IMG/VR virus record: IMGVR_UViG_3300031669_000001
Coordinates: 186,001-250,000 of that record
Reading direction: 5' to 3' (one strand)
DNA length: 64,000 nt
Position numbers and translations under genes: made by a program. This document shows positions 16,917 through 54,568 of this stretch, one piece after another. Under the pieces are notes generated by a model. That model made no database searches and had not been told where the DNA came from. It was given only the letters and a program-made list of their open reading frames with translations. Numbering within the stretch: position 1 is the stretch's first letter; every line of letters begins with the position of its first letter.

Positions 16917-16992
16917 TGGTCGCCCTGGAGGGATTCGAACCCTCGATCGCGATTTTAGAGATCGCAGCTTTACCGCTAAGCATTACAAGGCG
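16917..16992 (-). tRNA. amber suppressor tRNA (anticodon CTA)
   Basis: Acceptor CGCCTTG/CAGGGCG-A-CCA, anticodon arm GCGAT-CTCTAAA-ATCGC, T arm GAGGG-TTCGAAT-CCCTC. Confidence 0.88.
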
Positions 16993-35513: not shown

Positions 35514-36128
35514 TTATTCGCCGTCTTCCGGGAGACCTTGGCTAAACAGTCTATCGTAGTACTCTTTCGTCTTGATCTTAACCATAAAGTCATCACCTTT
35601 AGCGATGACACCTTCGAAGACTGGGTACTTGCCTTCGCGAACGTCATTGATGAATGACTTATTGAGGTTGCCCTCGTATATCACTTCAGCAGTTTCCGGC
35701 ATTGAGCCGTAGATGTCAACGAATTGTTTAGGAGGAACGAATCCCTTCTTAAACAGAAAAACGTCAAACAGCTTCAACTCCTTCGCTTCACCCTCGACGT
35801 GCTTTCCGGCAAAGCTTGACGGACCAAAAAGCTCGGTAAACGCTGTGATGCGCTCGGGCTTCTTGACTATCTGAGTCGTGCGGTAAACTATTTCATCTGC
35901 TAACTTTTCCATGAATATCGGAATTGCTTCGCAGAAGATTGGAGCGGAAGCGTCAAACATTTGGCGCCTGGTGCCGAATTTGTTCCAACCTTTCTTAGGA
36001 GACCACTCCCAGCGAAGGTTAGAACCGTCATACTTGTAGAAAGCGATGCATGATTTACCTAATGGAGCTTTTGAAGCACCTAAAATAGTTGGATATTGTA
36101 ACATTTTGATGCCTTTCATGTGGGTCAT
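35514..36128 (-). CDS. ATP-dependent RNA ligase-like nucleotidyltransferase
   Basis: KYDGSN (motif I), ELFG, LFDV, EGVIAK, KIK. Confidence 0.8.
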   Translation of the reverse strand: MTHMKGIKMLQYPTILGASKAPLGKSCIAFYKYDGSNLRWEWSPKKGWNKFGTRRQMFDASAPIFCEAIPIFMEKLADEIVYRTTQIVKKPERITAFTELFGPSSFAGKHVEGEAKELKLFDVFLFKKGFVPPKQFVDIYGSMPETAEVIYEGNLNKSFINDVREGKYPVFEGVIAKGDDFMVKIKTKEYYDRLFSQGLPEDGE

Positions 36129-36471: not shown

Positions 36472-37196
36472 TGGTGCCCTCGGACGAGAATCGAACTGTC
36501 GACCTAATTGCCTTATCATTCGGCTAACGGTGCAATATATTCTTTATTGATTTGATTCAATGAGACTATTTTCAAATCAACACTGTTCTGTAATATAACT
36601 AATTCTATTTTCCTCGCATCAATCTTGGCAAGATAATCATTTTTCGTATCAAAATATTTGTCTCCAACTTTAAAATCAGGATAATATTTATGATCTATTC
36701 CATTATCGTCTATCCAAGGTAGCGGTGCAGGTCGTTCCCATATAATATTCAATTCTTCTAGAATCTGAGCAAATTTAATTTCATAAGAACTCTGAAGATA
36801 CACCTCAGTCCCGTCATTTTTCCTAAAATATAATTTCAGTTTAGATGTATGTCCACCTAAACCATTAGCTTTAGCTTTCTTAGATAAGTTGGCTTTAGAT
36901 TCATTTGTATGTATAGTACGCGTATGACCTTTTAACTTCTTACTACTTGCAAGACCATATTTAGTAACACGAGGGTCAGATTTATCTAATCCTTTATTCC
37001 ATGCTGACTTACCAGTCATACCATTTGTATACTTACGATCTGGGTTATCTTTGCATAGTCTTTCATGATTCCGTTGTGAATTAGTATTTTTACTCTCTTT
37101 ATTACAAAATTTACAAAATAGCATAAGTTTTCTCCTTAATACTATTTATAAATTATTTCTCAAAGTGAATTGCTCTACCGACTGAGCTACAAGGGC
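36472..37196 (-). pseudogene. tRNA (probably Thr) split by an endonuclease gene
   Basis: 5' half GCCCTTG-TA-GCTC..GAGC at about 37165-37196; 3' half T arm-CGAGGGC-A-CCA at 36472-36510. Confidence 0.75.
36516..37124 (-). CDS. putative homing endonuclease (zinc finger + PD-(D/E)xK domain)
   Basis: CxxC..H...C, AWNKG repeat, S.YE, YYPDF, DTK; TATAAATA upstream. Confidence 0.75.
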   Translation of the reverse strand: MLFCKFCNKESKNTNSQRNHERLCKDNPDRKYTNGMTGKSAWNKGLDKSDPRVTKYGLASSKKLKGHTRTIHTNESKANLSKKAKANGLGGHTSKLKLYFRKNDGTEVYLQSSYEIKFAQILEELNIIWERPAPLPWIDDNGIDHKYYPDFKVGDKYFDTKNDYLAKIDARKIELVILQNSVDLKIVSLNQINKEYIAPLAE

Positions 37197-38178: not shown

Positions 38179-38254
38179 TGGAGTCGCGTGTGGGAATCGA
38201 ACCCGACGTCTACGGTTTTGCAGACCGTTGCATGAACCACTCTACGAACGCGAC
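38179..38254 (-). tRNA. tRNA-Cys(GCA)
   Basis: Loop CTGCAAA, U73, CCA. Confidence 0.85.
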
Positions 38255-38277: not shown

Positions 38278-38772
38278 CTATTTCTTTCTTGATACCTTCT
38301 TAACTCCACCGTCTGTGAAGATCAACTTGTGACCTTTTGCAAGGTTACAAGGTTGACACATAGTCTGCATATTGTCAACAGAGTTTGCTCCACCGTGATA
38401 CTTAGGCAGACGATGATCTGCATTCATCAAGATTTCCTTGCCATCTTCGTTGATGGCGTAGAGATTCATGATGACAGGTTTTCCAGGCTCAGCATCGTTA
38501 ATTTCAACAGCGAAGAATGAGCCTTCAATTCCACAACAACGACACTTTGTACCGTGAATCAAGAAAGTTCTCAGCTTGACGTTGTGAACGTTGATCAAGG
38601 TGTTGAACGCTTCCATCTCAACAGAAGGTGAGCTGCTATGAGGGAGTGAATCAATTTCTTTCATCGCGTCCAAGACACCGTCAACAGACAGGATTCCTAA
38701 CCGACGAAAGTTACGATGCTTCGCGACTAAAAAGTCGTCCATGAAAGAAGAGATTTTTGATATGTTCAACAT
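38278..38772 (-). CDS. HNH endonuclease family protein
   Basis: CxCC, DH..P...GG.N...N.Q..C..CN..K; start uncertain. Confidence 0.8.
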   Translation of the reverse strand: MLNISKISSFMDDFLVAKHRNFRRLGILSVDGVLDAMKEIDSLPHSSSPSVEMEAFNTLINVHNVKLRTFLIHGTKCRCCGIEGSFFAVEINDAEPGKPVIMNLYAINEDGKEILMNADHRLPKYHGGANSVDNMQTMCQPCNLAKGHKLIFTDGGVKKVSRKK

Positions 38773-38881
38773 TTGAGTAATTATATCACTGTTCATGTTG
38801 AAAGTAAACACAATTTGGTAGTACTCCACGGTTACGATCCGTGCCGTTGCAGCCCATCTGACCACTCTCCAGAGGATATGT

Positions 38882-38981
38882 TGGTAGTCCCGCTCGGACT
38901 CGAACCGAGAATGTGCGCTAATCTGGCGCCACAGAGTGCCACTTTATAAGGGTGGTGTTTTACCAATTAAACTACAGGACC
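38882..38981 (-). tRNA. tRNA-Ile(TAT) with long variable arm
   Basis: GGTCCTG/CGGGACT, loop CTTATAA, CCA. Confidence 0.8.
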
Positions 38982-39634
38982 AGTAATTCTATAAATTCTT
39001 CATTGATTAAGTCATTTGAAAGAACAACCACTTTGATGTTGTTCATTTTCATTGCAGATTTAATCTTTCGTTCATCTTTCTTGATCAGATAATCATTTTT
39101 TGGATCAAGAAAGATGTTTTGTTTTGGTAAATAAAAGTCTGGTATATATCTTCGTTTCTTACCGTTATCGTTCCAAATATATCCTTGTCGAACTTTAATC
39201 CACTCAATATTAAGTGAGTCTAAAATTTCAGCAACTCTAACCTCGTATGAAGACTCCAAAATTACTCCAGGCTTATACTCGACGTTCTTAGAATACTTTG
39301 AATGTTTTGTTAACCGTTTGCAAGCAATGATTGAAAGTTTTTCCTTCGTTTCTTCACAATGTGGATGGGAAAATATATAACCCTCTTTTTCCATTTGCCT
39401 TTTTCTTTCATTTCCCCTTGCGCCTGCTATTCTTTGCTGTTCTGGATTATGAGATCTACTTTTATGACCAGCGCATCCTTGAGATGACGAAAATTCCTTA
39501 GAGCAAATTTCACATACCCATTTTGTTTTCTTCTCTACTTGTCCCTTACATACAGCAACATGCTTGTTAAAATTAGGAACACTAATTTGCCGAGAACATT
39601 TAGGGCAATCTTTTTTCTGTTTAGAACCGTGCAT
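38972..39634 (-). CDS. putative homing endonuclease (C2H2 zinc fingers + PD-(D/E)xK)
   Basis: CPKC..H...C, CEIC...H....H, SSYE, YIPDF, DPKNDY. Confidence 0.75.
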   Translation of the reverse strand: MHGSKQKKDCPKCSRQISVPNFNKHVAVCKGQVEKKTKWVCEICSKEFSSSQGCAGHKSRSHNPEQQRIAGARGNERKRQMEKEGYIFSHPHCEETKEKLSIIACKRLTKHSKYSKNVEYKPGVILESSYEVRVAEILDSLNIEWIKVRQGYIWNDNGKKRRYIPDFYLPKQNIFLDPKNDYLIKKDERKIKSAMKMNNIKVVVLSNDLINEEFIELLVL

Positions 39635-40430: not shown

Positions 40431-41195
40431 TTAACTTCTTAAATCCGCCATTAACTCTTCAAGTTCTTGAAGAGTCAAGTTCAACGGGGTTTTACCCGTC
40501 GTTTCAATCCATGACTTATCCACTATAGCGTACACTTCATCTGTGTACCTTGAGAAGAATTCCCAAGTCATCTTGTACTTTTTACCCCAAGATACGCAAG
40601 TAGGTCCTTGATCGTCATAAGCAATCAAGATGATAGCGTGACCACCTTCTGTAGCAGCAAGGTTAGGATCTTGACTCACCGTCCAAACTTGAGGAGGTTC
40701 ACCTGCCGCAAACATACTATTTGGGACGTTGAAGCCGATGTAAGCTAGACCGAATTCTGCGATAGTAAGCTTCACATCGTTGATGTTATTGTGATCGACT
40801 TCCATGAAGCCTAAGATCTTGTCACGAGTTCCATCACCTAACGGAATTCCTTCATTCAACAGGTACTGTAAAACGTACTGCTCAACTCCGCCTTGATCAG
40901 TTGCAGGATTCTGTGGGTTGTAACCTGTAGCAGCCTCGTAAAGATTCAAGACGCATCTGTCAGGTTCTGTTTGCTCTGTCAGCGTGTTAGCTGTCCAGAT
41001 CTGTCTTGCATGATAGACCGCAGCGCAGGTGCAATCTCCCAATCTATCATTGAGCATAACACCAAAGTCTGTGATGTTGTGCGACCAGTCAATAGCGGCT
41101 GGTGGGGTCGGTAGCGGTTTACCGTAAACTGCCCGCATATTTTTTATTTTAGGATTGAACGCTCTTGCCTGACGGCCGAGTTTCATCTTCATCAT
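40431..41195 (-). CDS. papain-fold cysteine peptidase-like protein
   Basis: GDCTCAA, GGHA.....YD, SWG; late promoter upstream. Confidence 0.75.
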   Translation of the reverse strand: MMKMKLGRQARAFNPKIKNMRAVYGKPLPTPPAAIDWSHNITDFGVMLNDRLGDCTCAAVYHARQIWTANTLTEQTEPDRCVLNLYEAATGYNPQNPATDQGGVEQYVLQYLLNEGIPLGDGTRDKILGFMEVDHNNINDVKLTIAEFGLAYIGFNVPNSMFAAGEPPQVWTVSQDPNLAATEGGHAIILIAYDDQGPTCVSWGKKYKMTWEFFSRYTDEVYAIVDKSWIETTGKTPLNLTLQELEELMADLRS

Positions 41196-41245
41196 AATAC
41201 CTCCTTGAAAGATTACTGGAGATATTTATGGACAAACTTGTATGG

Positions 41246-41704: not shown

Positions 41705-41716
41705 ACAACGATTGAA

Positions 41717-41787
41717 CGACATACGGGGAATCGAACCCGCGATCTCCGGCGTGAAGGCCAGGGTTTTGTCCGTTAAACTACACATCT
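41717..41787 (-). tRNA. Glu-like tRNA with a 6-nt anticodon loop (CTTCAC), no CCA
   Basis: D and T arms intact; stem CTGGC/GCCGG. Confidence 0.5.
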
Positions 41788-41870
41788 CAGATCTTTTTTC
41801 AAAACTTGCTGGAATCGATTAAAATCTGTCAATCGTGATCATATCCACGGCAGCAACCGCTTCAATAATT

Positions 41871-43210: not shown

Positions 43211-43319
43211 AAGTAGAGTAAAAGTTGTTTAGAGCTATTGCCACCTTGGCACCCCTGCTCTTGAAGAGCAGGGGATTAGAATCGAACTAACGAAGTATCT
43301 CTTAACATTGCAACTACTT
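43211..43319 (-). ncRNA. Y-RNA-like handle family, copy 2 (T-acceptor-D module)
   Basis: AAGTA-GTTGCA...GATACTTCG, T loop TTCGATT, 10-bp closed stem, TTTTACTC-TACTT. Confidence 0.75.
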
Positions 43320-43392
43320 GGTGGTGAGTGAAGGTATCGATCCTTCGTCTAAGCCTTATGAGAGCCTTGTTCTACCTTTGAACTAAATCACC
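43319..43392 (-). tRNA. tRNA-Met(CAT)
   Basis: Loop CTCATAA, CCA. Confidence 0.8.
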
Positions 43393-43416
43393 ACGATAGC
43401 TTTACCTATCGGAATA

Positions 43417-43492
43417 CGGTGGGTGCACTCGGTGTCGAACCGAAACTCTTAGGGTAAAAGCCTAATGTGCAGAGCCGCTACACTATACACCC
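43417..43492 (-). tRNA. tRNA-Lys(TTT)
   Basis: Loop CTTTTAC. Confidence 0.82.
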
Positions 43493-43499
43493 AAACTTC

Positions 43500-43591
43500 G
43501 GGTGGGACTGGTGGGATTCGAACCCACGATGTGAGCTTTCGCATGTACCGGATTAAAAGTCCGGTGTCTTCAACCTCTTGACTACAGACCC
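43500..43591 (-). tRNA. tRNA-Lys(TTT) with long variable arm
   Basis: Loop CTTTTAA, about 20-nt variable region. Confidence 0.78.
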
Positions 43592-43681
43592 ATTAAACAG
43601 CTTTGGAATCAGAGGTTGATTTACCAAAGCCATGGGTAGAAAATCGTTCCATGGCACATACTCCTTTTGTTGAAATTAAAT

Positions 43682-43756
43682 TGGTCCGCCCACGTGGAAT
43701 CGAACCACGGACCGGAGTTTAGAAGACTCCTGTTATATCCACTTAACTATGGGCAG
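43682..43756 (-). tRNA. tRNA-Arg(TCT)
   Basis: Loop CTTCTAA, CCA; 5' end overlaps the endonuclease stop codon. Confidence 0.88.
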
Positions 43757-44379
43757 AAACATTTTCTTCCTTTTGACCACCCTTGATCTAGGTAAGTCTG
43801 AAGAATATCTTTCTTGATCTTGATGGTTTTCTGTTGCTTTTCTGAGAAGATCCAGCAAGATCCAAATTGAGAGTTTCTATCACCGGATTGAGCAGATCTC
43901 ATTTTAGCTTTCGTATCTTCAGAGTGAGTCTTTCCGAACATCGGATTAGAGTCTGCTGAATTCAAATCGCTTAATTTTGCTCTTGATTCATATGAATGAG
44001 ATTTCCCTTGGAATTTTCCCTTGCCCATATTTGATTTTCTTGCAGCATTACTTGCATTGGACTCTATGCAGAACCCATTTCTTCTAATCTTTGTGATGTA
44101 TTCAAATCCACCGGTGCCGCCTCTTCTGAGGTTGTAGACATCATCACGAGAAAGAAACTCATCACTAACAATTTCTTTCTCCCTCGCATACATAGCTTCC
44201 GAATTCTCGAAAGTCTCAAGTATGACTTTTTCAAAGTTTTCGATCCCGTATCTTTTGATAGCACGACCGATAACTTTTCCAGAGCCCATGTACCCATCAT
44301 CAAAATTCTTGGTCTTATGAACTCCAACGTAGATTTTTCCATTCACCATGTTGGTGATTTGATAGATGCAATATTTCAT
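43747..44379 (-). CDS. GIY-YIG homing endonuclease (Seg-like) with NUMOD3 repeats
   Basis: CIY.ITN..NGKIYVG, YMGSG, YNL..GG.GG, GK.HS repeats. Confidence 0.9.
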   Translation of the reverse strand: MKYCIYQITNMVNGKIYVGVHKTKNFDDGYMGSGKVIGRAIKRYGIENFEKVILETFENSEAMYAREKEIVSDEFLSRDDVYNLRRGGTGGFEYITKIRRNGFCIESNASNAARKSNMGKGKFQGKSHSYESRAKLSDLNSADSNPMFGKTHSEDTKAKMRSAQSGDRNSQFGSCWIFSEKQQKTIKIKKDILQTYLDQGWSKGRKCFCP

Positions 44380-44408
44380 GCTTCTATTTATGGAGAATCC
44401 ACAACGTG

Positions 44409-44477
44409 TTGCGAACCCGGAATCGAACCGGCCTGATGGGTTATGAGCCCAACATGCGCCACTACATCTTTATCGCG
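44409..44477 (-). tRNA. initiator-like tRNA(CAT), atypical, no CCA
   Basis: C1xA72 mismatch, GGG/CCC anticodon stem. Confidence 0.6.
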
Positions 44478-44550
44478 GTCTCTCCGGCTGGACTCGAACC
44501 AGCATCGTCTGCGTTCCAAACACAGTGAACAACCTTTATCCCACAGAGAG
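44476..44550 (-). tRNA. tRNA-Pro(TGG)
   Basis: Loop TTTGGAA. Confidence 0.8.
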
Positions 44551-44565
44551 AAGGGTACTACTAAT

Positions 44566-44643
44566 TGGCCCTGTTGAATGGGTTCACACCATTATCACGC
44601 CGCCTAGGTGGCAGCTAGCATTGTAGTTTATGCTTACAACAGG
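44566..44643 (-). tRNA. atypical tRNA, nominally Arg(CCT), A33
   Basis: CCTGTTG/CAACAGG-G-CCA, loop CACCTAG, T loop TGTGAAC. Confidence 0.55.
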
Positions 44644-44647
44644 ATTG

Positions 44648-44723
44648 TGGCGTTCGCGGAGGGGATTGAACCCTCTTCTGGAGATTGAAAGTCTCCTGTC
44701 CTAACCATGTAGACGACGCGAAC
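44648..44723 (-). tRNA. tRNA-Glu(TTC)
   Basis: Loop CTTTCAA, CCA. Confidence 0.87.
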
Positions 44724-44918
44724 ATGAATGTAGCCTAAGCACCGACAGATAGGTTGCGATCCTACCCTGTTGCTCGAGTATGACACTGTCGTGGCATTCT
44801 CTTCTTCACAAGAGACCTCAGTTGTGACTTACGATCTCTTGATCATCTACATTGAGACTTCGTTACACTCGTACACCGAGCAATGACCGACGAGATAAAC
44901 TCGACGATCACCGAAGTC

Positions 44919-44992
44919 TGGCGGGCCAGAGGGGTGTCGAACCCCCGCGTGAAAATAGACAGTTTTCCATACTACCGTTATATGACTGACCC
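44919..44992 (-). tRNA. tRNA-Asp(GTC)
   Basis: Loop CTGTCTA, G73, CCA. Confidence 0.83.
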
Positions 44993-45046
44993 GTGGGATG
45001 CTTCAATTTTTATAGACGCGGAAGCAAAGGTCGCGCCATTGTTTGG

Positions 45047-45131
45047 AGTCAGAGAAGATGTCGGCAAGAGTGACTGGGCGATGCCCAAGTTTTCCATAAA
45101 CGAAGTAACTCTCATTCCTATGCAACTGACT
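45047..45131 (-). ncRNA. Y-RNA-like handle family, copy 3 (single hairpin payload)
   Basis: AGTCA-GTTGCATAG...GTTACTTCG...TCTTCTC-TGACT. Confidence 0.72.
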
Positions 45132-45206
45132 TGGTACACCTGCAGGGAATCGAACCCTGTATTCCAGCTTGAAGGGCTGGCCACTCAACCAATTGTATTC
45201 AGGTGT
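45132..45206 (-). tRNA. tRNA-Glu(TTC), C33
   Basis: Loop CCTTCAA, CCA. Confidence 0.8.
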
Positions 45207-45209
45207 GCA

Positions 45210-45284
45210 AGGCTCCCCAGGCTGGATTCGAACCAACGACCAAGTGATTAACAGTCACCTACTCTACCACTGAGCTACTAGGGA
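45210..45284 (-). tRNA. tRNA-Asn(GTT)
   Basis: Loop CTGTTAA; overlaps the endonuclease stop codon. Confidence 0.88.
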
Positions 45285-45880
45285 ATTGTTACAAAATCTT
45301 TTGCTATTTGAATCCACTGTTTTGGATCTTTGTACATCTTTTGCCATTCTATTCTAAGTACTTTCCATCCAAAATCTTTCAAAAATTTATCTTTTCGTTC
45401 ATCACGTTCTCGATATTCTTGAAATCGTTTGTGTTGTTCACCGTCGATCTCAATGCAGAGACTTTTATGAACCCAGGCAAAGTCAAGAGAGAAGTTGCCT
45501 AAGGAATATTCGCGAACATAATTTTTATCTTCAAACTCGTTTTCGATAACTTTCATGAAAAACTTTTCTGGATAACTTGGCATGTTGTTCCACCGAGATT
45601 TACCAATATTCCAAGCTCGTCCTTCAGAATGAGCTTTCTTCATTGATTCGCTTGTTAGCTGTTTAGTTTTGGAAGAAGGAATATGACCAGGTTTTCCCTT
45701 AAGTGCGATAGAAATTTTATTGGACATCTTCCAGATTCTTGGATCAGATTTATTCAAACCTTTAGTCCAAGAATCTTTACCAGCAAAGGGTTTATGATCT
45801 TTACCAGAACCGTGTGTTCTCCAAATATGAGTTCCAATACCCATTTTAGAAAATTCTTTATCGCAAAATGTACATTTCAT
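45278..45880 (-). CDS. putative homing endonuclease (zinc finger + DUF559/Vsr-like domain)
   Basis: CxxC..H....H, S.PE, DFAW, IEIDG.QH, RD..KD, GW.VLR; start set to MKCTFC. Confidence 0.8.
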   Translation of the reverse strand: MKCTFCDKEFSKMGIGTHIWRTHGSGKDHKPFAGKDSWTKGLNKSDPRIWKMSNKISIALKGKPGHIPSSKTKQLTSESMKKAHSEGRAWNIGKSRWNNMPSYPEKFFMKVIENEFEDKNYVREYSLGNFSLDFAWVHKSLCIEIDGEQHKRFQEYRERDERKDKFLKDFGWKVLRIEWQKMYKDPKQWIQIAKDFVTIP

Positions 45881-45917: not shown

Positions 45918-46011
45918 TGGCTCCCCCAGCAGGATTCGAACCTGCATACCGTTCGCGACGGACTACGAGTGGTTAACAGCCACTTCACTTGCCAGTTATG
46001 TGTACGGGGGA
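45918..46011 (-). tRNA. tRNA-Asn(GTT) with long variable arm
   Basis: Loop CTGTTAA, variable hairpin CCGT/ACGG, CCA. Confidence 0.8.
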
Positions 46012-53910: not shown

Positions 53911-53970
53911 AATGAATTTCCTTATGAGTATGTTATGAAAAGAGGAATCAAATGATTCCTCGTTTGCTAC

Positions 53971-54174
53971 TTAAACAGCTTGGATATTGGAAGCTTGTGC
54001 TCCCTTTTGTCCTTGAGTCACGTCAAAGGAAACCTTCTGGCCTTCTTTGAGAGATTTGAAACCGCTCATGTTGATCGCAGAGAAGTGTGCGAACAAATCG
54101 TCACTACCTACATCTGGGGTAATGAAGCCAAAACCTTTAGCGTCATTGAACCACTTTACTGTACCTGTTGCCAT
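53971..54174 (-). CDS. cspA: cold-shock protein
   Basis: [21 protein letters not shown]. Confidence 0.96.
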
Positions 54175-54227
54175 TCTTATTTCTTTCTAAATTGAACAAT
54201 CACCGAAATTGATGATTGGGTAAAACA

Positions 54228-54568
54228 ATAAACTAGAGATGAGGGCAGATTATGCTCTTACCAAGCCTTTCGGCCGTCTTCCCTTTCGGGGTCGACATGG
54301 TAGCTTGAATTAACCATCCTCAAGCTTAGGACCACCTAACCGCACATGATCGGACATGCGCAACCAGCATGTTAAGCACCTAGTTTAGTCCAGGCTACGA
54401 CCCAGTTTATCGTCTGGGAACTATTCTGTGATCACCACAGACAGTGGGTAAACTATTTTCACACTCTTGCTTGGTTAGGTCGAGTGCTATCTTAAAGTTG
54501 CCCTTAAGAAGTAGTTCCATCAGCTTCACAAGTTGTCGAAGTATCACAATCTAATGCAGCTAGTTTAT
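54228..54568 (-). ncRNA. Y-RNA-like handle family, copy 4 (about 280-nt structured payload)
   Basis: ATAAACTA-GCTGCATTAGATTGT-GATACTTCG...ATAATCT-GCCCTCATCTC-TAGTTTAT. Confidence 0.7.

What the first reader, a model, noticed from the sequence alone, without database searches (positions are those of the whole stretch)
43682..45880. Unrelated endonuclease families converge on stop codons embedded in tRNA 5' ends
Seen: the GIY-YIG gene ends at TAG = positions 8-10 of tRNA-Arg(TCT). The DUF559-like gene ends at a TAG within the acceptor strand of tRNA-Asn(GTT) and sits between two Asn(GTT) genes. With the two PD-(D/E)xK cases, 4 of the 5 nucleases in the array do this. Inference: overlap ties each selfish gene to a useful tRNA, and RNase P maturation would leave a non-stop endonuclease mRNA, a built-in down-regulation that links to ribosome rescue.
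Basis: partly seen in the sequence, partly recalled or inferred. Interest (0 to 1): 0.65.

Follow-up and report, generated by a model that had tools for sequence, protein, structure and literature searches.

The report
Homing endonuclease genes ending inside tRNAs
In the tRNA gene array of this 345-kb soil phage, selfish homing-endonuclease genes sit so tightly against the next tRNA gene that their stop codons lie inside the tRNA; this is real, recurrent and specific to such nucleases, but phages T4 and T5 show the same kind of arrangement, and the idea that tRNA processing thereby limits nuclease expression was published in 2008.

Summary
Both focal overlaps are exact. The SegB-like GIY-YIG gene ends at TAG, positions 8-10 of tRNA-Arg(UCU). 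The DUF559 gene ends at TAG, positions 5-7 of tRNA-Asn(GUU), and lies between two Asn(GUU) genes. A third case is a zinc-finger PD-(D/E)xK gene ending at positions 8-10 of a 97-nt tRNA-Ile(UAU) that only Rfam detects. The claimed fourth case differs: that gene sits inside a split tRNA. The HNH gene stops 23 nt before tRNA-Cys. So the count is 3 of 5, not 4 of 5. In about 100 related loci plus T4 and T5, 27 of 44 nuclease ORFs near a tRNA end inside it, against 5 of 31 other ORFs (p = 1e-4). The stops fall at positions that tRNA conservation supplies (TAG at 8-10 in 44% of tRNAs). Each nuclease family keeps its tRNA partner across unrelated contigs: DUF559 with Asn, PD-(D/E)xK with long-arm Ile(UAU), SegB with Arg in T4. 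T5 hegC and hegD overlap tRNAs in the same way. Brok-Volchanskaya et al. 2008 already proposed that tRNA maturation cripples segB mRNA. The non-stop/tmRNA step is logical but untested, although the phage does encode a tmRNA. Verdict: a new member of a known kind, of moderate interest.

The parts
43747..44379 (-). SegB-like GIY-YIG + NUMOD3 homing endonuclease gene (210 aa). Its last 10 nt are tRNA-Arg positions 1-10.
   Evidence: Pfam GIY-YIG and NUMOD3. phrog_314 homing endonuclease, 3e-48. 40% identity over the full length to T4 SegB, E 2e-48.
43682..43756 (-). tRNA-Arg(UCU). Its U8-A9-G10 (43749-43747) is the stop codon of the GIY-YIG gene.
   Evidence: ARAGORN, Rfam 58.2 bits, sequence read.
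45278..45880 (-). Zinc-finger + DUF559 (Vsr-like PD-(D/E)xK) homing endonuclease gene (200 aa). Its last 7 nt are tRNA-Asn positions 1-7. TAG-TAG tandem stops at tRNA positions 5-10.
   Evidence: Pfam DUF559 1.9e-12 and MTES_1575. Weak PDB matches 3hrl and 3r3p. Sequence.
45211..45284 (-). tRNA-Asn(GUU), the downstream partner of the DUF559 gene.
   Evidence: ARAGORN, Rfam 66.5 bits. DUF559 homologues in L081, L083 and L085 also abut or overlap a tRNA-Asn(GUU).
45918..46011 (-). Second Asn(GUU) gene upstream of the DUF559 gene. It is 94 nt with a long variable arm.
   Evidence: ARAGORN, Rfam 40.3 bits. A similar Asn-like element lies upstream of the homologue in L083.
38972..39634 (-). Zinc-finger PD-(D/E)xK-type endonuclease gene (220 aa). 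Its stop TAG is positions 8-10 of the next tRNA, and its last two residues are encoded by the acceptor stem.
   Evidence: phrog_15137 endonuclease 1e-11. 40% identity to the paralogue at 36516-37124 over the nuclease domain. Homologues in L100 and L103 have the same TAG at 8-10 of tRNA-Ile(UAU).
38885..38981 (-). 97-nt tRNA-Ile(UAU) with a long variable arm, partner of the PD-(D/E)xK gene.
   Evidence: Rfam 54.9 bits. Fold. Aligns with long-arm Ile(UAU) tRNAs of L026, L100 and L103.
36516..37124 (-). Paralogous zinc-finger PD-(D/E)xK-type endonuclease gene (202 aa) lying inside a split tRNA gene. It has a strong Shine-Dalgarno sequence and ends TGA-TAA.
   Evidence: ORF list, PHROG matches, sequence.
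36472..37196 (-). Split tRNA gene: 5' half 37196-37159 and 3' half about 36529-36472, with complementary acceptor strands, interrupted by about 630 nt that hold the endonuclease gene. No ribozyme was detected.
   Evidence: ARAGORN intron mode. No group I or II intron hit by Rfam at E up to 10.
38278..38865 (-). HNH endonuclease gene. It is the one array nuclease with its own stop (TAG) 23 nt upstream of tRNA-Cys (38179-38254).
   Evidence: Pfam HNH 3.5e-07, coordinates.
44385..44391 (-). ATAAATA motif 6 nt before the GIY-YIG start codon, resembling a T4-type late promoter. The same motif lies at 37143-37149, 19 nt before the start of the 36516-37124 gene.
   Evidence: 17 matches in the window against 8 +/- 3 expected, 14 of them on the coding strand. 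The same motif precedes homologous nuclease genes in L095, L097, L100, L101 and L103.

Best explanation
These are free-standing homing-endonuclease genes that parasitise the tRNA array of a jumbo phage. They comprise a SegB-like GIY-YIG gene, a DUF559/Vsr-like gene and two zinc-finger PD-(D/E)xK paralogues.

Each gene is packed with no spacer against the tRNA gene that follows it, and it is inherited with that tRNA as a module. Its reading frame therefore runs a few bases into the tRNA. It ends at the first in-frame stop there, usually the near-universal U8-A9-G10 (TAG).

Shown: the geometry, the nuclease identities, the recurrence, the enrichment in nucleases, and the family-specific tRNA partners.

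Inferred: the nuclease mRNA is continuous with the tRNA precursor. RNase P cuts at tRNA position +1, which is 4-7 nt upstream of the stop. Only still-unprocessed RNA can then give a normally terminated protein, while processed mRNA lacks a stop and any 3' UTR. Three of the genes also lack a Shine-Dalgarno sequence. Together this most likely keeps output of a potentially self-toxic nuclease low.

I cannot say whether that low output is selected or merely tolerated in a selfish gene. Ordinary array genes keep their stop just outside the tRNA.
For: Geometry.

Identity.

Same strand, with no terminator possible between the ORF and the tRNA. The promoter and terminator scan is at chance level. An RNA-library contig with 100% identity spans 43271-44428, across the GIY-YIG/tRNA-Arg junction.

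Recurrence in independent contigs: stops at position 8 (Lys, Gly x2, Trp, Ile x2), 12-14 (Gly x2, Lys, Asn, Ile), 5-6 (Asn, Ala), and straddling +1 (Phe, Asp, Met).

Nuclease-specific: 27/44 nuclease ORFs against 5/31 other ORFs end inside the tRNA, p = 1.2e-4. Other ORFs mostly end 2-15 nt before it. The same split holds in T5: hegC, hegD and T5.069 overlap, while five small ORFs end at -2 to -17.

Shallow read-ins only: 17 of 19 by position 15 against 36% expected.

Conserved modules in differing contexts: DUF559 with tRNA-Asn in four contigs; PD-(D/E)xK with long-arm tRNA-Ile(UAU) and TAG at 8-10 in three.

Precedent and published hypothesis: T4 segB directly upstream of tRNA-Arg(UCU), and PMC2330249.

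The phage has its own permuted tmRNA.
Against: No RNA 5' or 3' ends could be seen. The only RNA data are contigs, and DNA carry-over cannot be excluded.

About a third of flush nuclease genes keep their stop 2-15 nt outside the tRNA, T4 segB among them. Within one family the stop wanders (DUF559-Asn: -2, +5, +5, +13). Embedding as such is therefore not conserved, except in the PD-(D/E)xK-Ile module.

The ATAAATA motifs suggest that some of these genes have their own promoter.

Non-stop ribosomes can also be released by ArfA- or ArfB-type factors. That would give a nearly full-length protein lacking only 2-3 residues, which may be active, so non-stop need not mean down-regulation.

The survey loci were found through homology to this window's nucleases, and related modules are not fully independent.
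Confidence: 0.55

Rival explanations
1. Neutral compaction. Deletion bias removes every dispensable base in phage tRNA arrays. A selfish nuclease gene with a tolerant C-terminus can lose its own stop and borrow the tRNA's conserved TAG or TAA at no cost. The overlap would then have no regulatory effect worth selecting.
For: All ORFs in these arrays, nuclease or not, are flush with the next tRNA (20 of 31 other ORFs end 2-15 nt before it). Stops fall at the positions that random read-in predicts, 8 and 13. The stop position drifts among homologues. The tail after the conserved GWxKGRK motif is 0-5 residues of any sequence.
Against: Pure compaction does not explain why ordinary array genes almost never cross into the tRNA while nuclease genes often do (p = 1e-4; also T5). 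That asymmetry implies that crossing has a cost to expression. TAG at 8-10 is conserved across 50-57% identical PD-(D/E)xK homologues.
Confidence: 0.3
2. Homing mechanics (not exclusive of the best explanation). The downstream tRNA is the nuclease's target gene, or a cleavage-resistant 'rescue' allele of it. The nuclease gene is kept as close as possible to it so that both are co-converted into cut genomes, as in intronless homing. The overlap is a by-product of selection for the tightest linkage and a small cassette.
For: Family-specific partners in different genomic contexts. T4 SegB recognises tRNA genes and drives inheritance of the tRNA region. Orphan tRNA-Ile(UAU) 5' halves cut off exactly after anticodon position 35 lie upstream of the PD-(D/E)xK gene in L103 and L101/L102, and they match an intact tRNA in L026. 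The window holds a tRNA split by the paralogue. A tRNA-Asn in L083 has an insert at position 35/36.
Against: Linkage hardly differs between a stop at -5 and one at +8, so this explains adjacency but not embedding. SegB-like genes sit before at least ten different tRNA species. No cleavage sites are known for these enzymes, and no empty-site relative of this phage was found.
Confidence: 0.3
3. The overlap is functionally silent because the nuclease is made from its own late-type promoter and translated co-transcriptionally before the tRNA folds and is cleaved. Full-length, normally terminated protein would then predominate.
For: ATAAATA motifs lie directly upstream of two of the window's nuclease genes and of several homologues. 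A metatranscriptome contig bridges the junction.
Against: The transcript must still run into the tRNA, and every later ribosome would meet processed mRNA. Three of the genes lack a Shine-Dalgarno sequence, which argues against efficient early loading. The asymmetry with ordinary genes remains unexplained.
Confidence: 0.15
4. Artefact: the ORFs or the tRNAs are not real genes, so the overlaps are meaningless.
For: One partner tRNA (38885-38981) is missed by ARAGORN. Some ARAGORN calls in this array are weak by Rfam.
Against: All three overlapped tRNAs score 55-66 bits in Rfam. All the ORFs have significant nuclease-family matches and full-length homologues in many phages.
Confidence: 0.02

Closest known systems
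Phage T4 segB, upstream of tRNA-Arg(UCU) in the T4 tRNA cluster (Brok-Volchanskaya et al. 2008, PMC2330249)
   Same: The window's GIY-YIG protein is a full-length SegB homologue (40% identity). It sits in a tRNA cluster directly before a tRNA-Arg(UCU), ending in the same GWxKGRK motif and a short tail. The T4 paper already proposes that tRNA-Arg maturation cuts segB mRNA at its stop and lowers expression.
   Different: In T4 the stop (TAA) lies 5 nt before the tRNA. Here the tRNA starts 12 nt closer to the conserved motif, and the stop is tRNA positions 8-10. No cleavage or homing data exist for this protein.
Phage T5 hegC (F-TflI), hegD (F-TflII) and T5.069 in the T5 tRNA region
   Same: As annotated in AY543070, these nuclease ORFs end inside the downstream tRNA genes. 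Their stops are at positions 12-14 of tRNA-Ser2, 21-23 of tRNA-Gln2 and 22-24 of tRNA-Asn. The small non-nuclease ORFs there end just outside.
   Different: The folds differ (HNH and T5orf172/MUG113), the overlaps are deeper, and one partner tRNA is marked as a pseudogene.
Intronless homing by free-standing endonucleases (T4 SegF, SegG; my own knowledge of the literature, and the review PMC2988022 listed)
   Same: The nuclease gene lies next to its target gene. The resident allele is resistant, and the flanks are co-converted.
   Different: Here the neighbour is a structural RNA gene that also supplies the stop codon. Truncated or split copies of the same tRNA are left beside the nuclease gene.
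tRNA punctuation of mitochondrial transcripts with incomplete stop codons (established knowledge)
   Same: mRNA 3' ends are created by excision of the adjacent tRNA. Some ORFs lose all or part of their stop at the cut. Cases here with TA|G straddling +1 (L005, L008, L081) look just like this.
   Different: Mitochondria complete the stop by polyadenylation. No such repair is known in bacteria, where the product would be a non-stop mRNA.
I-Bth0305I / Vsr-like 'EDxHD' homing endonucleases and DUF559
   Same: The DUF559 domain matches at 1.9e-12. There are weak sequence matches to PDB 3hrl and to the mobile intron protein 3r3p.
   Different: This gene is free-standing, lies beside a tRNA rather than in an intron, and has N-terminal zinc-finger and NUMOD-like modules. 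The match to 3r3p is not significant (E 0.2).

Membership tests
SegB-like free-standing GIY-YIG homing endonuclease | GIY-YIG catalytic domain plus NUMOD3 DNA-binding module | tested here: met
   Pfam PF01541 (26.4 bits, cut-off 22.6) and PF07460 (46 bits). phrog_314, 3e-48.
SegB-like free-standing GIY-YIG homing endonuclease | Full-length homology to T4 SegB | tested here: met
   BLASTP 40% identity, E 2e-48, residues 1-207 against 1-219.
SegB-like free-standing GIY-YIG homing endonuclease | Located in a phage tRNA cluster next to a tRNA gene | tested here: met
   Between tRNA-Pro and tRNA-Arg(UCU). T4 segB lies between tRNA-Ile and tRNA-Arg(UCU).
SegB-like free-standing GIY-YIG homing endonuclease | Site-specific cleavage of tRNA genes, and homing in co-infection | not testable with these tools
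   Needs enzyme assays and phage crosses. No nuclease-free relative of this phage was found for an empty-site comparison.
DUF559 / Vsr-like (EDxHD) homing endonuclease | DUF559 nuclease domain | tested here: met
   PF04480, 47.5 bits against a cut-off of 20.6, residues 100-189.
DUF559 / Vsr-like (EDxHD) homing endonuclease | Sequence relationship to the solved I-Bth0305I catalytic domain | tested here: inconclusive
   3r3p E 0.2; 3hrl E 0.0017. No structure was predicted.
PD-(D/E)xK endonuclease (ORFs 38972-39634 and 36516-37124) | Recognisable PD-(D/E)xK nuclease domain | tested here: inconclusive
   Pfam matches are all below the cut-offs. PHROG endonuclease families match at 1e-11 and 6e-07. 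A 'PDF ... D-x-K-N-D' motif is conserved between the paralogues. Paralogues in the second array match Phage_endo_I just below its cut-off.
mRNA 3' end set by tRNA processing (published hypothesis for T4 segB and the T5 endonucleases) | Nuclease ORF and tRNA lie on one transcript | tested here: inconclusive
   Same strand and no room for a terminator. An RNA-library contig covers 43271-44428 across the junction, but DNA carry-over is not excluded.
mRNA 3' end set by tRNA processing (published hypothesis for T4 segB and the T5 endonucleases) | RNase P cleavage removes the stop; the product is tmRNA-tagged or reduced | not testable with these tools
   Only contigs of old runs were available, which show no molecule ends.
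Intron-encoded homing endonuclease in a tRNA gene (considered for the split tRNA 36472-37196) | Self-splicing group I or II ribozyme around the ORF | tested here: not met
   No intron family hit at E up to 10. The ORF fills 609 of about 630 inserted bases.

The most novel reading that the evidence does not exclude
The PD-(D/E)xK and DUF559 genes may be natural 'cleave-and-rescue' cassettes. On this reading the nuclease cuts resident tRNA genes in the anticodon, around position 35/36. That would leave the orphan 5' halves, the split tRNA and the insert-bearing tRNA-Asn seen here.

The mobile unit would carry, fused to the 3' end of its ORF, its own atypical tRNA of the same specificity that resists cleavage: long-variable-arm Ile(UAU), or Asn(GUU). 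Sharing the stop codon with the rescue tRNA would make the nuclease and its rescue inseparable. It would also restrict nuclease synthesis to unprocessed precursor RNA.
Probability: 0.15. Interest if true: 0.65.

Novelty: new member of a known kind. Interest (0 to 1): 0.38.

Why it matters
Homing endonucleases with relaxed specificity can cut their own genome, so how phages keep them in check is a real question. If removal of the stop codon by tRNA processing throttles them, that would be a simple post-transcriptional control built from genome layout alone. It would be a bacterial counterpart of mitochondrial tRNA punctuation, and it would give phage-encoded tmRNA a concrete substrate.

Three results from this work sharpen a 2008 hypothesis into experiments that can be done in T5 or Stenotrophomonas phage Bhz51:
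- nuclease genes cross into tRNAs while ordinary array genes stop just short;
- nuclease families keep fixed tRNA partners;
- truncated tRNA halves lie beside some of these genes.

There is also a practical point. Annotation pipelines tend to drop such ORFs: the Bhz51 gene is unannotated, and ARAGORN misses several partner tRNAs.

Tried and rejected
No close relatives or empty site were found.
- Megablast and blastn of the region against 50,697 phage records gave no match.
- Exact tRNA patterns gave nothing in IMG/VR, and only the source contig in the JGI metagenomes.
- The neighbouring 254-aa gene has no relative in IMG/VR.
An insertion-site comparison for this phage was therefore impossible.

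Alternative genetic code was rejected. The stop usage is TAA 131, TGA 90, TAG 25, and reading TAG as sense gives the smallest gain in coding cover, despite a tRNA(CUA).

Sigma-70 promoter and terminator scan: the counts are at chance level and uninformative.

Reads: only Logan contigs were available. A stretch of 4,401 bases was laid, within the operators' 6,000-letter limit. These contigs cannot show RNA ends or strand.

The 254-aa ORF 40431-41195 is not a nuclease. It matches phrog_19005, has its own TAA stop and a hairpin.

I suspected a tRNA 5'-half remnant upstream of 38972-39634. The alignment is unconvincing, so I make no claim for the window copy.

A group I intron reading of the split tRNA was rejected.

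The large protein searches, structure prediction and complex prediction were not used, because the family scans settled the identities.
Full report
**Context.** The window is bases 186001-250000 of a single 345,069-bp contig. The contig comes from a soil metagenome. It carries 52 ARAGORN tRNAs and a permuted tmRNA with the tag ANDANGALALAA (Rfam tmRNA_permuted 84.5 bits). Almost all genes are on the minus strand, and the code is standard: stops are TAA 131, TGA 90, TAG 25 among long ORFs. No close relative exists in the phage, IMG/VR or JGI collections searched.

**The observation.** All coordinates are on the minus strand.
- The GIY-YIG ORF 43747-44379 ends '...TGC CCA TAG'. tRNA-Arg(UCU) begins at 43756, so the TAG is tRNA positions 8-10 (Rfam 58 bits).
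- The DUF559 ORF 45278-45880 ends '...ATT CCC TAG', followed at once by a second TAG. tRNA-Asn(GUU) begins at 45284, so the stop is positions 5-7 of the acceptor stem. A 94-nt Asn(GUU) gene lies directly upstream at 45918-46011.
- A third case needs Rfam. ORF 38972-39634 ends at TAG, positions 8-10 of a 97-nt tRNA (38885-38981, 54.9 bits) that ARAGORN misses.
ORF 36516-37124 lies inside a tRNA gene. The 5' half, with a canonical D-arm, starts at 37196. The 3' half, with a T-arm and CCA, ends at 36472. The acceptor strands pair 7 of 7, and about 630 nt lie between them. There is no intron ribozyme.
- The HNH ORF 38278-38865 has its own TAG 23 nt before tRNA-Cys.
- The 254-aa ORF 40431-41195 is not a nuclease.

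The count is therefore 3 of 5, with a fourth gene embedded in a tRNA in another way.

**What the genes are.**
- The GIY-YIG protein has GIY-YIG and NUMOD3 domains. It is a full-length homologue of T4 SegB (40% identity, E 2e-48).
- The second protein has a DUF559 (Vsr-like) nuclease domain behind a zinc finger.
- ORFs 38972-39634 and 36516-37124 are paralogues. Their nuclease domains are 40% identical, with a PD...DxK-type motif and PHROG endonuclease matches. Pfam matches stay below the cut-offs.
- Two more zinc-finger genes resembling endonuclease I sit in the genome's second tRNA array. One ends 142 nt before a tRNA. The other ends 6 nt before a weak tRNA-like hit.

**Is it chance?** I asked three things.
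- Where would a frame that runs into a tRNA stop? I used 318 distinct phage tRNAs and all three frames. TAG occupies positions 8-10 in 44% of them and TAA in 6%. The first in-frame stop falls most often at position 8, then at 13. Only 36% of read-ins end by position 15 (37% for this genome alone). The positions of the embedded stops are therefore what tRNA conservation supplies. They are not a special convergent device.
- How deep are the real read-ins? They are far shallower than random: 17 of 19 end by position 15 (p = 2e-6). Only junctions that give an early stop persist.
- Do other genes in the same arrays do this? I fetched about 100 loci holding homologues of the window's nucleases. I added T4 and T5, called tRNAs and ORFs, classified the ORFs by homology and Pfam, and removed duplicates. 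Among ORFs ending within 60 nt of, or inside, a same-strand tRNA:
  - 44 nuclease ORFs split as 6 distant, 11 flush (-15 to -2), 22 overlapping (-1 to +15) and 5 deeper;
  - 31 other ORFs split as 6, 20, 3 and 2. Two of the three overlaps are by a single base.
  - Fisher's test gives p = 1.2e-4.

Every kind of gene in these arrays is flush with the next tRNA, but essentially only nuclease genes cross into it. There are caveats. The loci were found through nuclease homology, though not through overlap, and related modules are counted separately.

**Recurrence and partners.** SegB-like genes with the C-terminal GWxKGRK motif end at position 8 of tRNA-Lys, tRNA-Gly (two kinds) and tRNA-Trp. Others end at 13-14 of tRNA-Gly and tRNA-Lys, straddle +1 of tRNA-Phe, tRNA-Asp and tRNA-Met, or end 2-14 nt before other tRNAs. 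The gap on their upstream side has a median of 65 nt.

DUF559 homologues (45-69% identity) abut or overlap a tRNA-Asn(GUU) in L081 (stop flush), L083 (positions 5-7) and L085 (13-15), as in the window. Acceptor sequences and neighbours differ in each case.

Homologues of 38972-39634 in L100 and L103 (50-57% identity) end at TAG, positions 8-10 of a long-arm tRNA-Ile(UAU), exactly as here and again in different surroundings. Homologues of 36516-37124 end at position 13 (L094), at position 12 (L095, between two Ile(GAU) genes) and at position 36 (L096) of a tRNA.

A 735-kb phage (LR756501) has a DUF559-like ORF ending at TAG 8-10 of tRNA-Lys(CUU). Stenotrophomonas phage Bhz51 has an unannotated homologue that reads 31 nt into tRNA-His.

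**Precedent.** T4 segB lies directly before tRNA-Arg(UCU), with its TAA 5 nt upstream of the tRNA. Brok-Volchanskaya et al. (PMC2330249) made several points:
- SegB recognises tRNA genes.
- segB is part of the tRNA precursor transcript.
- The same is proposed for the T5 endonucleases in the tRNA cluster.

In the T5 record, hegC ends at positions 12-14 of tRNA-Ser2, hegD at 21-23 of tRNA-Gln2, and T5.069 (T5orf172/MUG113) at 22-24 of tRNA-Asn. Five small ORFs of unknown function end 2-17 nt before their tRNAs. The arrangement and the regulatory idea are therefore known. The ribosome-rescue link is new, and I found no paper on it.

**Mechanism.**
- Shown: the layout, its specificity for nuclease genes, and the conserved nuclease-tRNA modules.
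- Inferred from established tRNA biology: RNase P cuts between -1 and +1. The nuclease mRNAs would then end 7, 4 and 7 nt before their stops, inside codons 208, 198 and 218. They would have no stop and no 3' UTR.
- Inferred: such RNAs stall ribosomes and are substrates for tmRNA, either the phage's own or the host's. The protein would be tagged, or released a few residues short.

A ribosome terminating at position 8-10 must unfold the acceptor stem and D-arm. Translation and processing of one molecule therefore exclude each other. Three of the genes have no Shine-Dalgarno sequence, whereas the neighbouring ordinary genes and ORF 36516-37124 have AAGGAG. Ordinary array genes keep their stop just outside the tRNA, which suggests that crossing the boundary costs expression. 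That is the best indirect support for the hypothesis.

Several facts weigh against a selected role for the embedding itself. The stop position drifts among homologues. T4 keeps its stop outside the tRNA. Alternative rescue factors could release active protein. The only RNA evidence is a metatranscriptome contig identical to 43271-44428. It bridges the GIY-YIG/tRNA-Arg junction, which is compatible with a co-transcript or with DNA carry-over, and it says nothing about ends.

An ATAAATA motif, like a T4 late promoter, is enriched on the coding strand (17 against 8 expected). It lies just before two of the nuclease genes and before several homologues. These genes may therefore also have their own promoter. 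Their transcripts must still run into the tRNA.

**A lead beyond the finding.** In L103 and L101/L102 the PD-(D/E)xK gene is preceded by an orphan tRNA 5' half. This half matches the intact long-arm tRNA-Ile(UAU) of L026 base for base up to anticodon position 35, and then diverges. L096 has a similar orphan half. The window's paralogue splits a tRNA. The tRNA-Asn after the DUF559 gene in L083 has a 78-nt insert between positions 35 and 36. Together these suggest nucleases that cut tRNA genes in the anticodon and travel with an intact tRNA of the same specificity. I rate this cleave-and-rescue reading as possible but unproven.

**Verdict.** Linkage to a tRNA and recurrence across nuclease folds hold up. 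The stop itself is supplied passively by tRNA conservation. The down-regulation step is logical, already published as a hypothesis, and untested. This is a new member of a known kind, of moderate interest.

Noticed in passing
window 36472-37196 (-): A tRNA gene is split in the anticodon region by about 630 nt that consist almost wholly of a zinc-finger PD-(D/E)xK endonuclease ORF (36516-37124). The acceptor halves pair 7 of 7, and no group I or II intron was detected. It is either a dead tRNA or needs an unknown joining route. An RNA-ligase-like ORF lies about 400 nt downstream.
   Followed up: partly
window 43500-43592, 45918-46011, 38885-38981 (-); also L026, L061, L094, L100, L103: tRNAs with Lys(UUU), Asn(GUU) and Ile(UAU) anticodons carry long variable arms like class II tRNAs, and the Lys and Asn copies each lie within about 650 nt of a normal-length tRNA with the same anticodon. 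Long-arm Ile(UAU) recurs in six unrelated phage contigs, with a conserved 'AGAT(T/G)(A/G)' loop in the extra arm. Long-arm Thr, Trp, Met, Asp and Cys tRNAs also occur in the fetched loci.
   Followed up: partly
window 16917-16992 (-): A well-formed tRNA with anticodon CUA (amber suppressor type; Rfam 44 bits) stands alone between protein genes. TAG is nevertheless an ordinary, rare stop in this genome (25 of 246 long ORFs). All three embedded stops are TAG. Read-through would add 41, 1 (a second TAG follows at once) and 4 codons.
   Followed up: partly
genome 306555-306937 (outside the window; L089 557-958): The phage encodes a permuted (two-piece) tmRNA with the tag ANDANGALALAA, which suggests an alpha- or betaproteobacterial type host. 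Contig L083 also has a permuted tmRNA inside its tRNA array.
   Followed up: partly
window 35514-36128 (-): A 204-aa ORF with a KxDG nucleotidyl-transferase motif (KYDGSN) and a PHROG RNA ligase match (7.5e-06) lies inside the tRNA array. It is a candidate tRNA repair enzyme.
   Followed up: no
L103 2427-2461, L101/L102 about 2406-2440, L096 about 2433-2470: Orphan tRNA 5' halves lie directly upstream of PD-(D/E)xK endonuclease genes. Those of L103 and L101 are cut off right after anticodon position 35 of a tRNA-Ile(UAU).
   Followed up: partly
L083 3528-3677: The tRNA-Asn(GUU) after a DUF559 endonuclease gene has a 78-nt insert between anticodon positions 35 and 36. That is too short for a known self-splicing intron. 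Rfam also reports tRNAs of 120-150 nt in L002 (2598-2717) and L081 (2830-2950).
   Followed up: no
L081 4457-4949: A GOLLD RNA (185 bits) lies inside a phage tRNA array and encloses a tRNA-Leu.
   Followed up: no
L091 4004-4657 (Stenotrophomonas phage vB_SmaM_Bhz51, OR797040 about 80059-80712): A 217-aa zinc-finger endonuclease ORF between tRNA-Ile and tRNA-His is not annotated in the GenBank record. It reads 31 nt into tRNA-His.
   Followed up: partly
window 44388-44476 (-): Between tRNA-Pro and the GIY-YIG start lies a degenerate tRNA-like stretch with a CTCATAA loop and a GGTTCGATTCC T-arm, the motif that T4 SegB recognises. Neither ARAGORN nor Rfam calls it.
   Followed up: no
window 53935-54318 (-): There is a match to the cspA thermoregulator family at 55 bits, below the gathering score of 78. 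tRNA-like calls with odd anticodon loops occur at 41716-41789.
   Followed up: no
window, 17 sites including 44385-44391, 37143-37149 and 41223-41229 (-): The motif ATAAATA is twice as frequent as expected and lies mostly on the coding strand, shortly before start codons. It resembles the T4 late-promoter core TATAAATA.
   Followed up: partly
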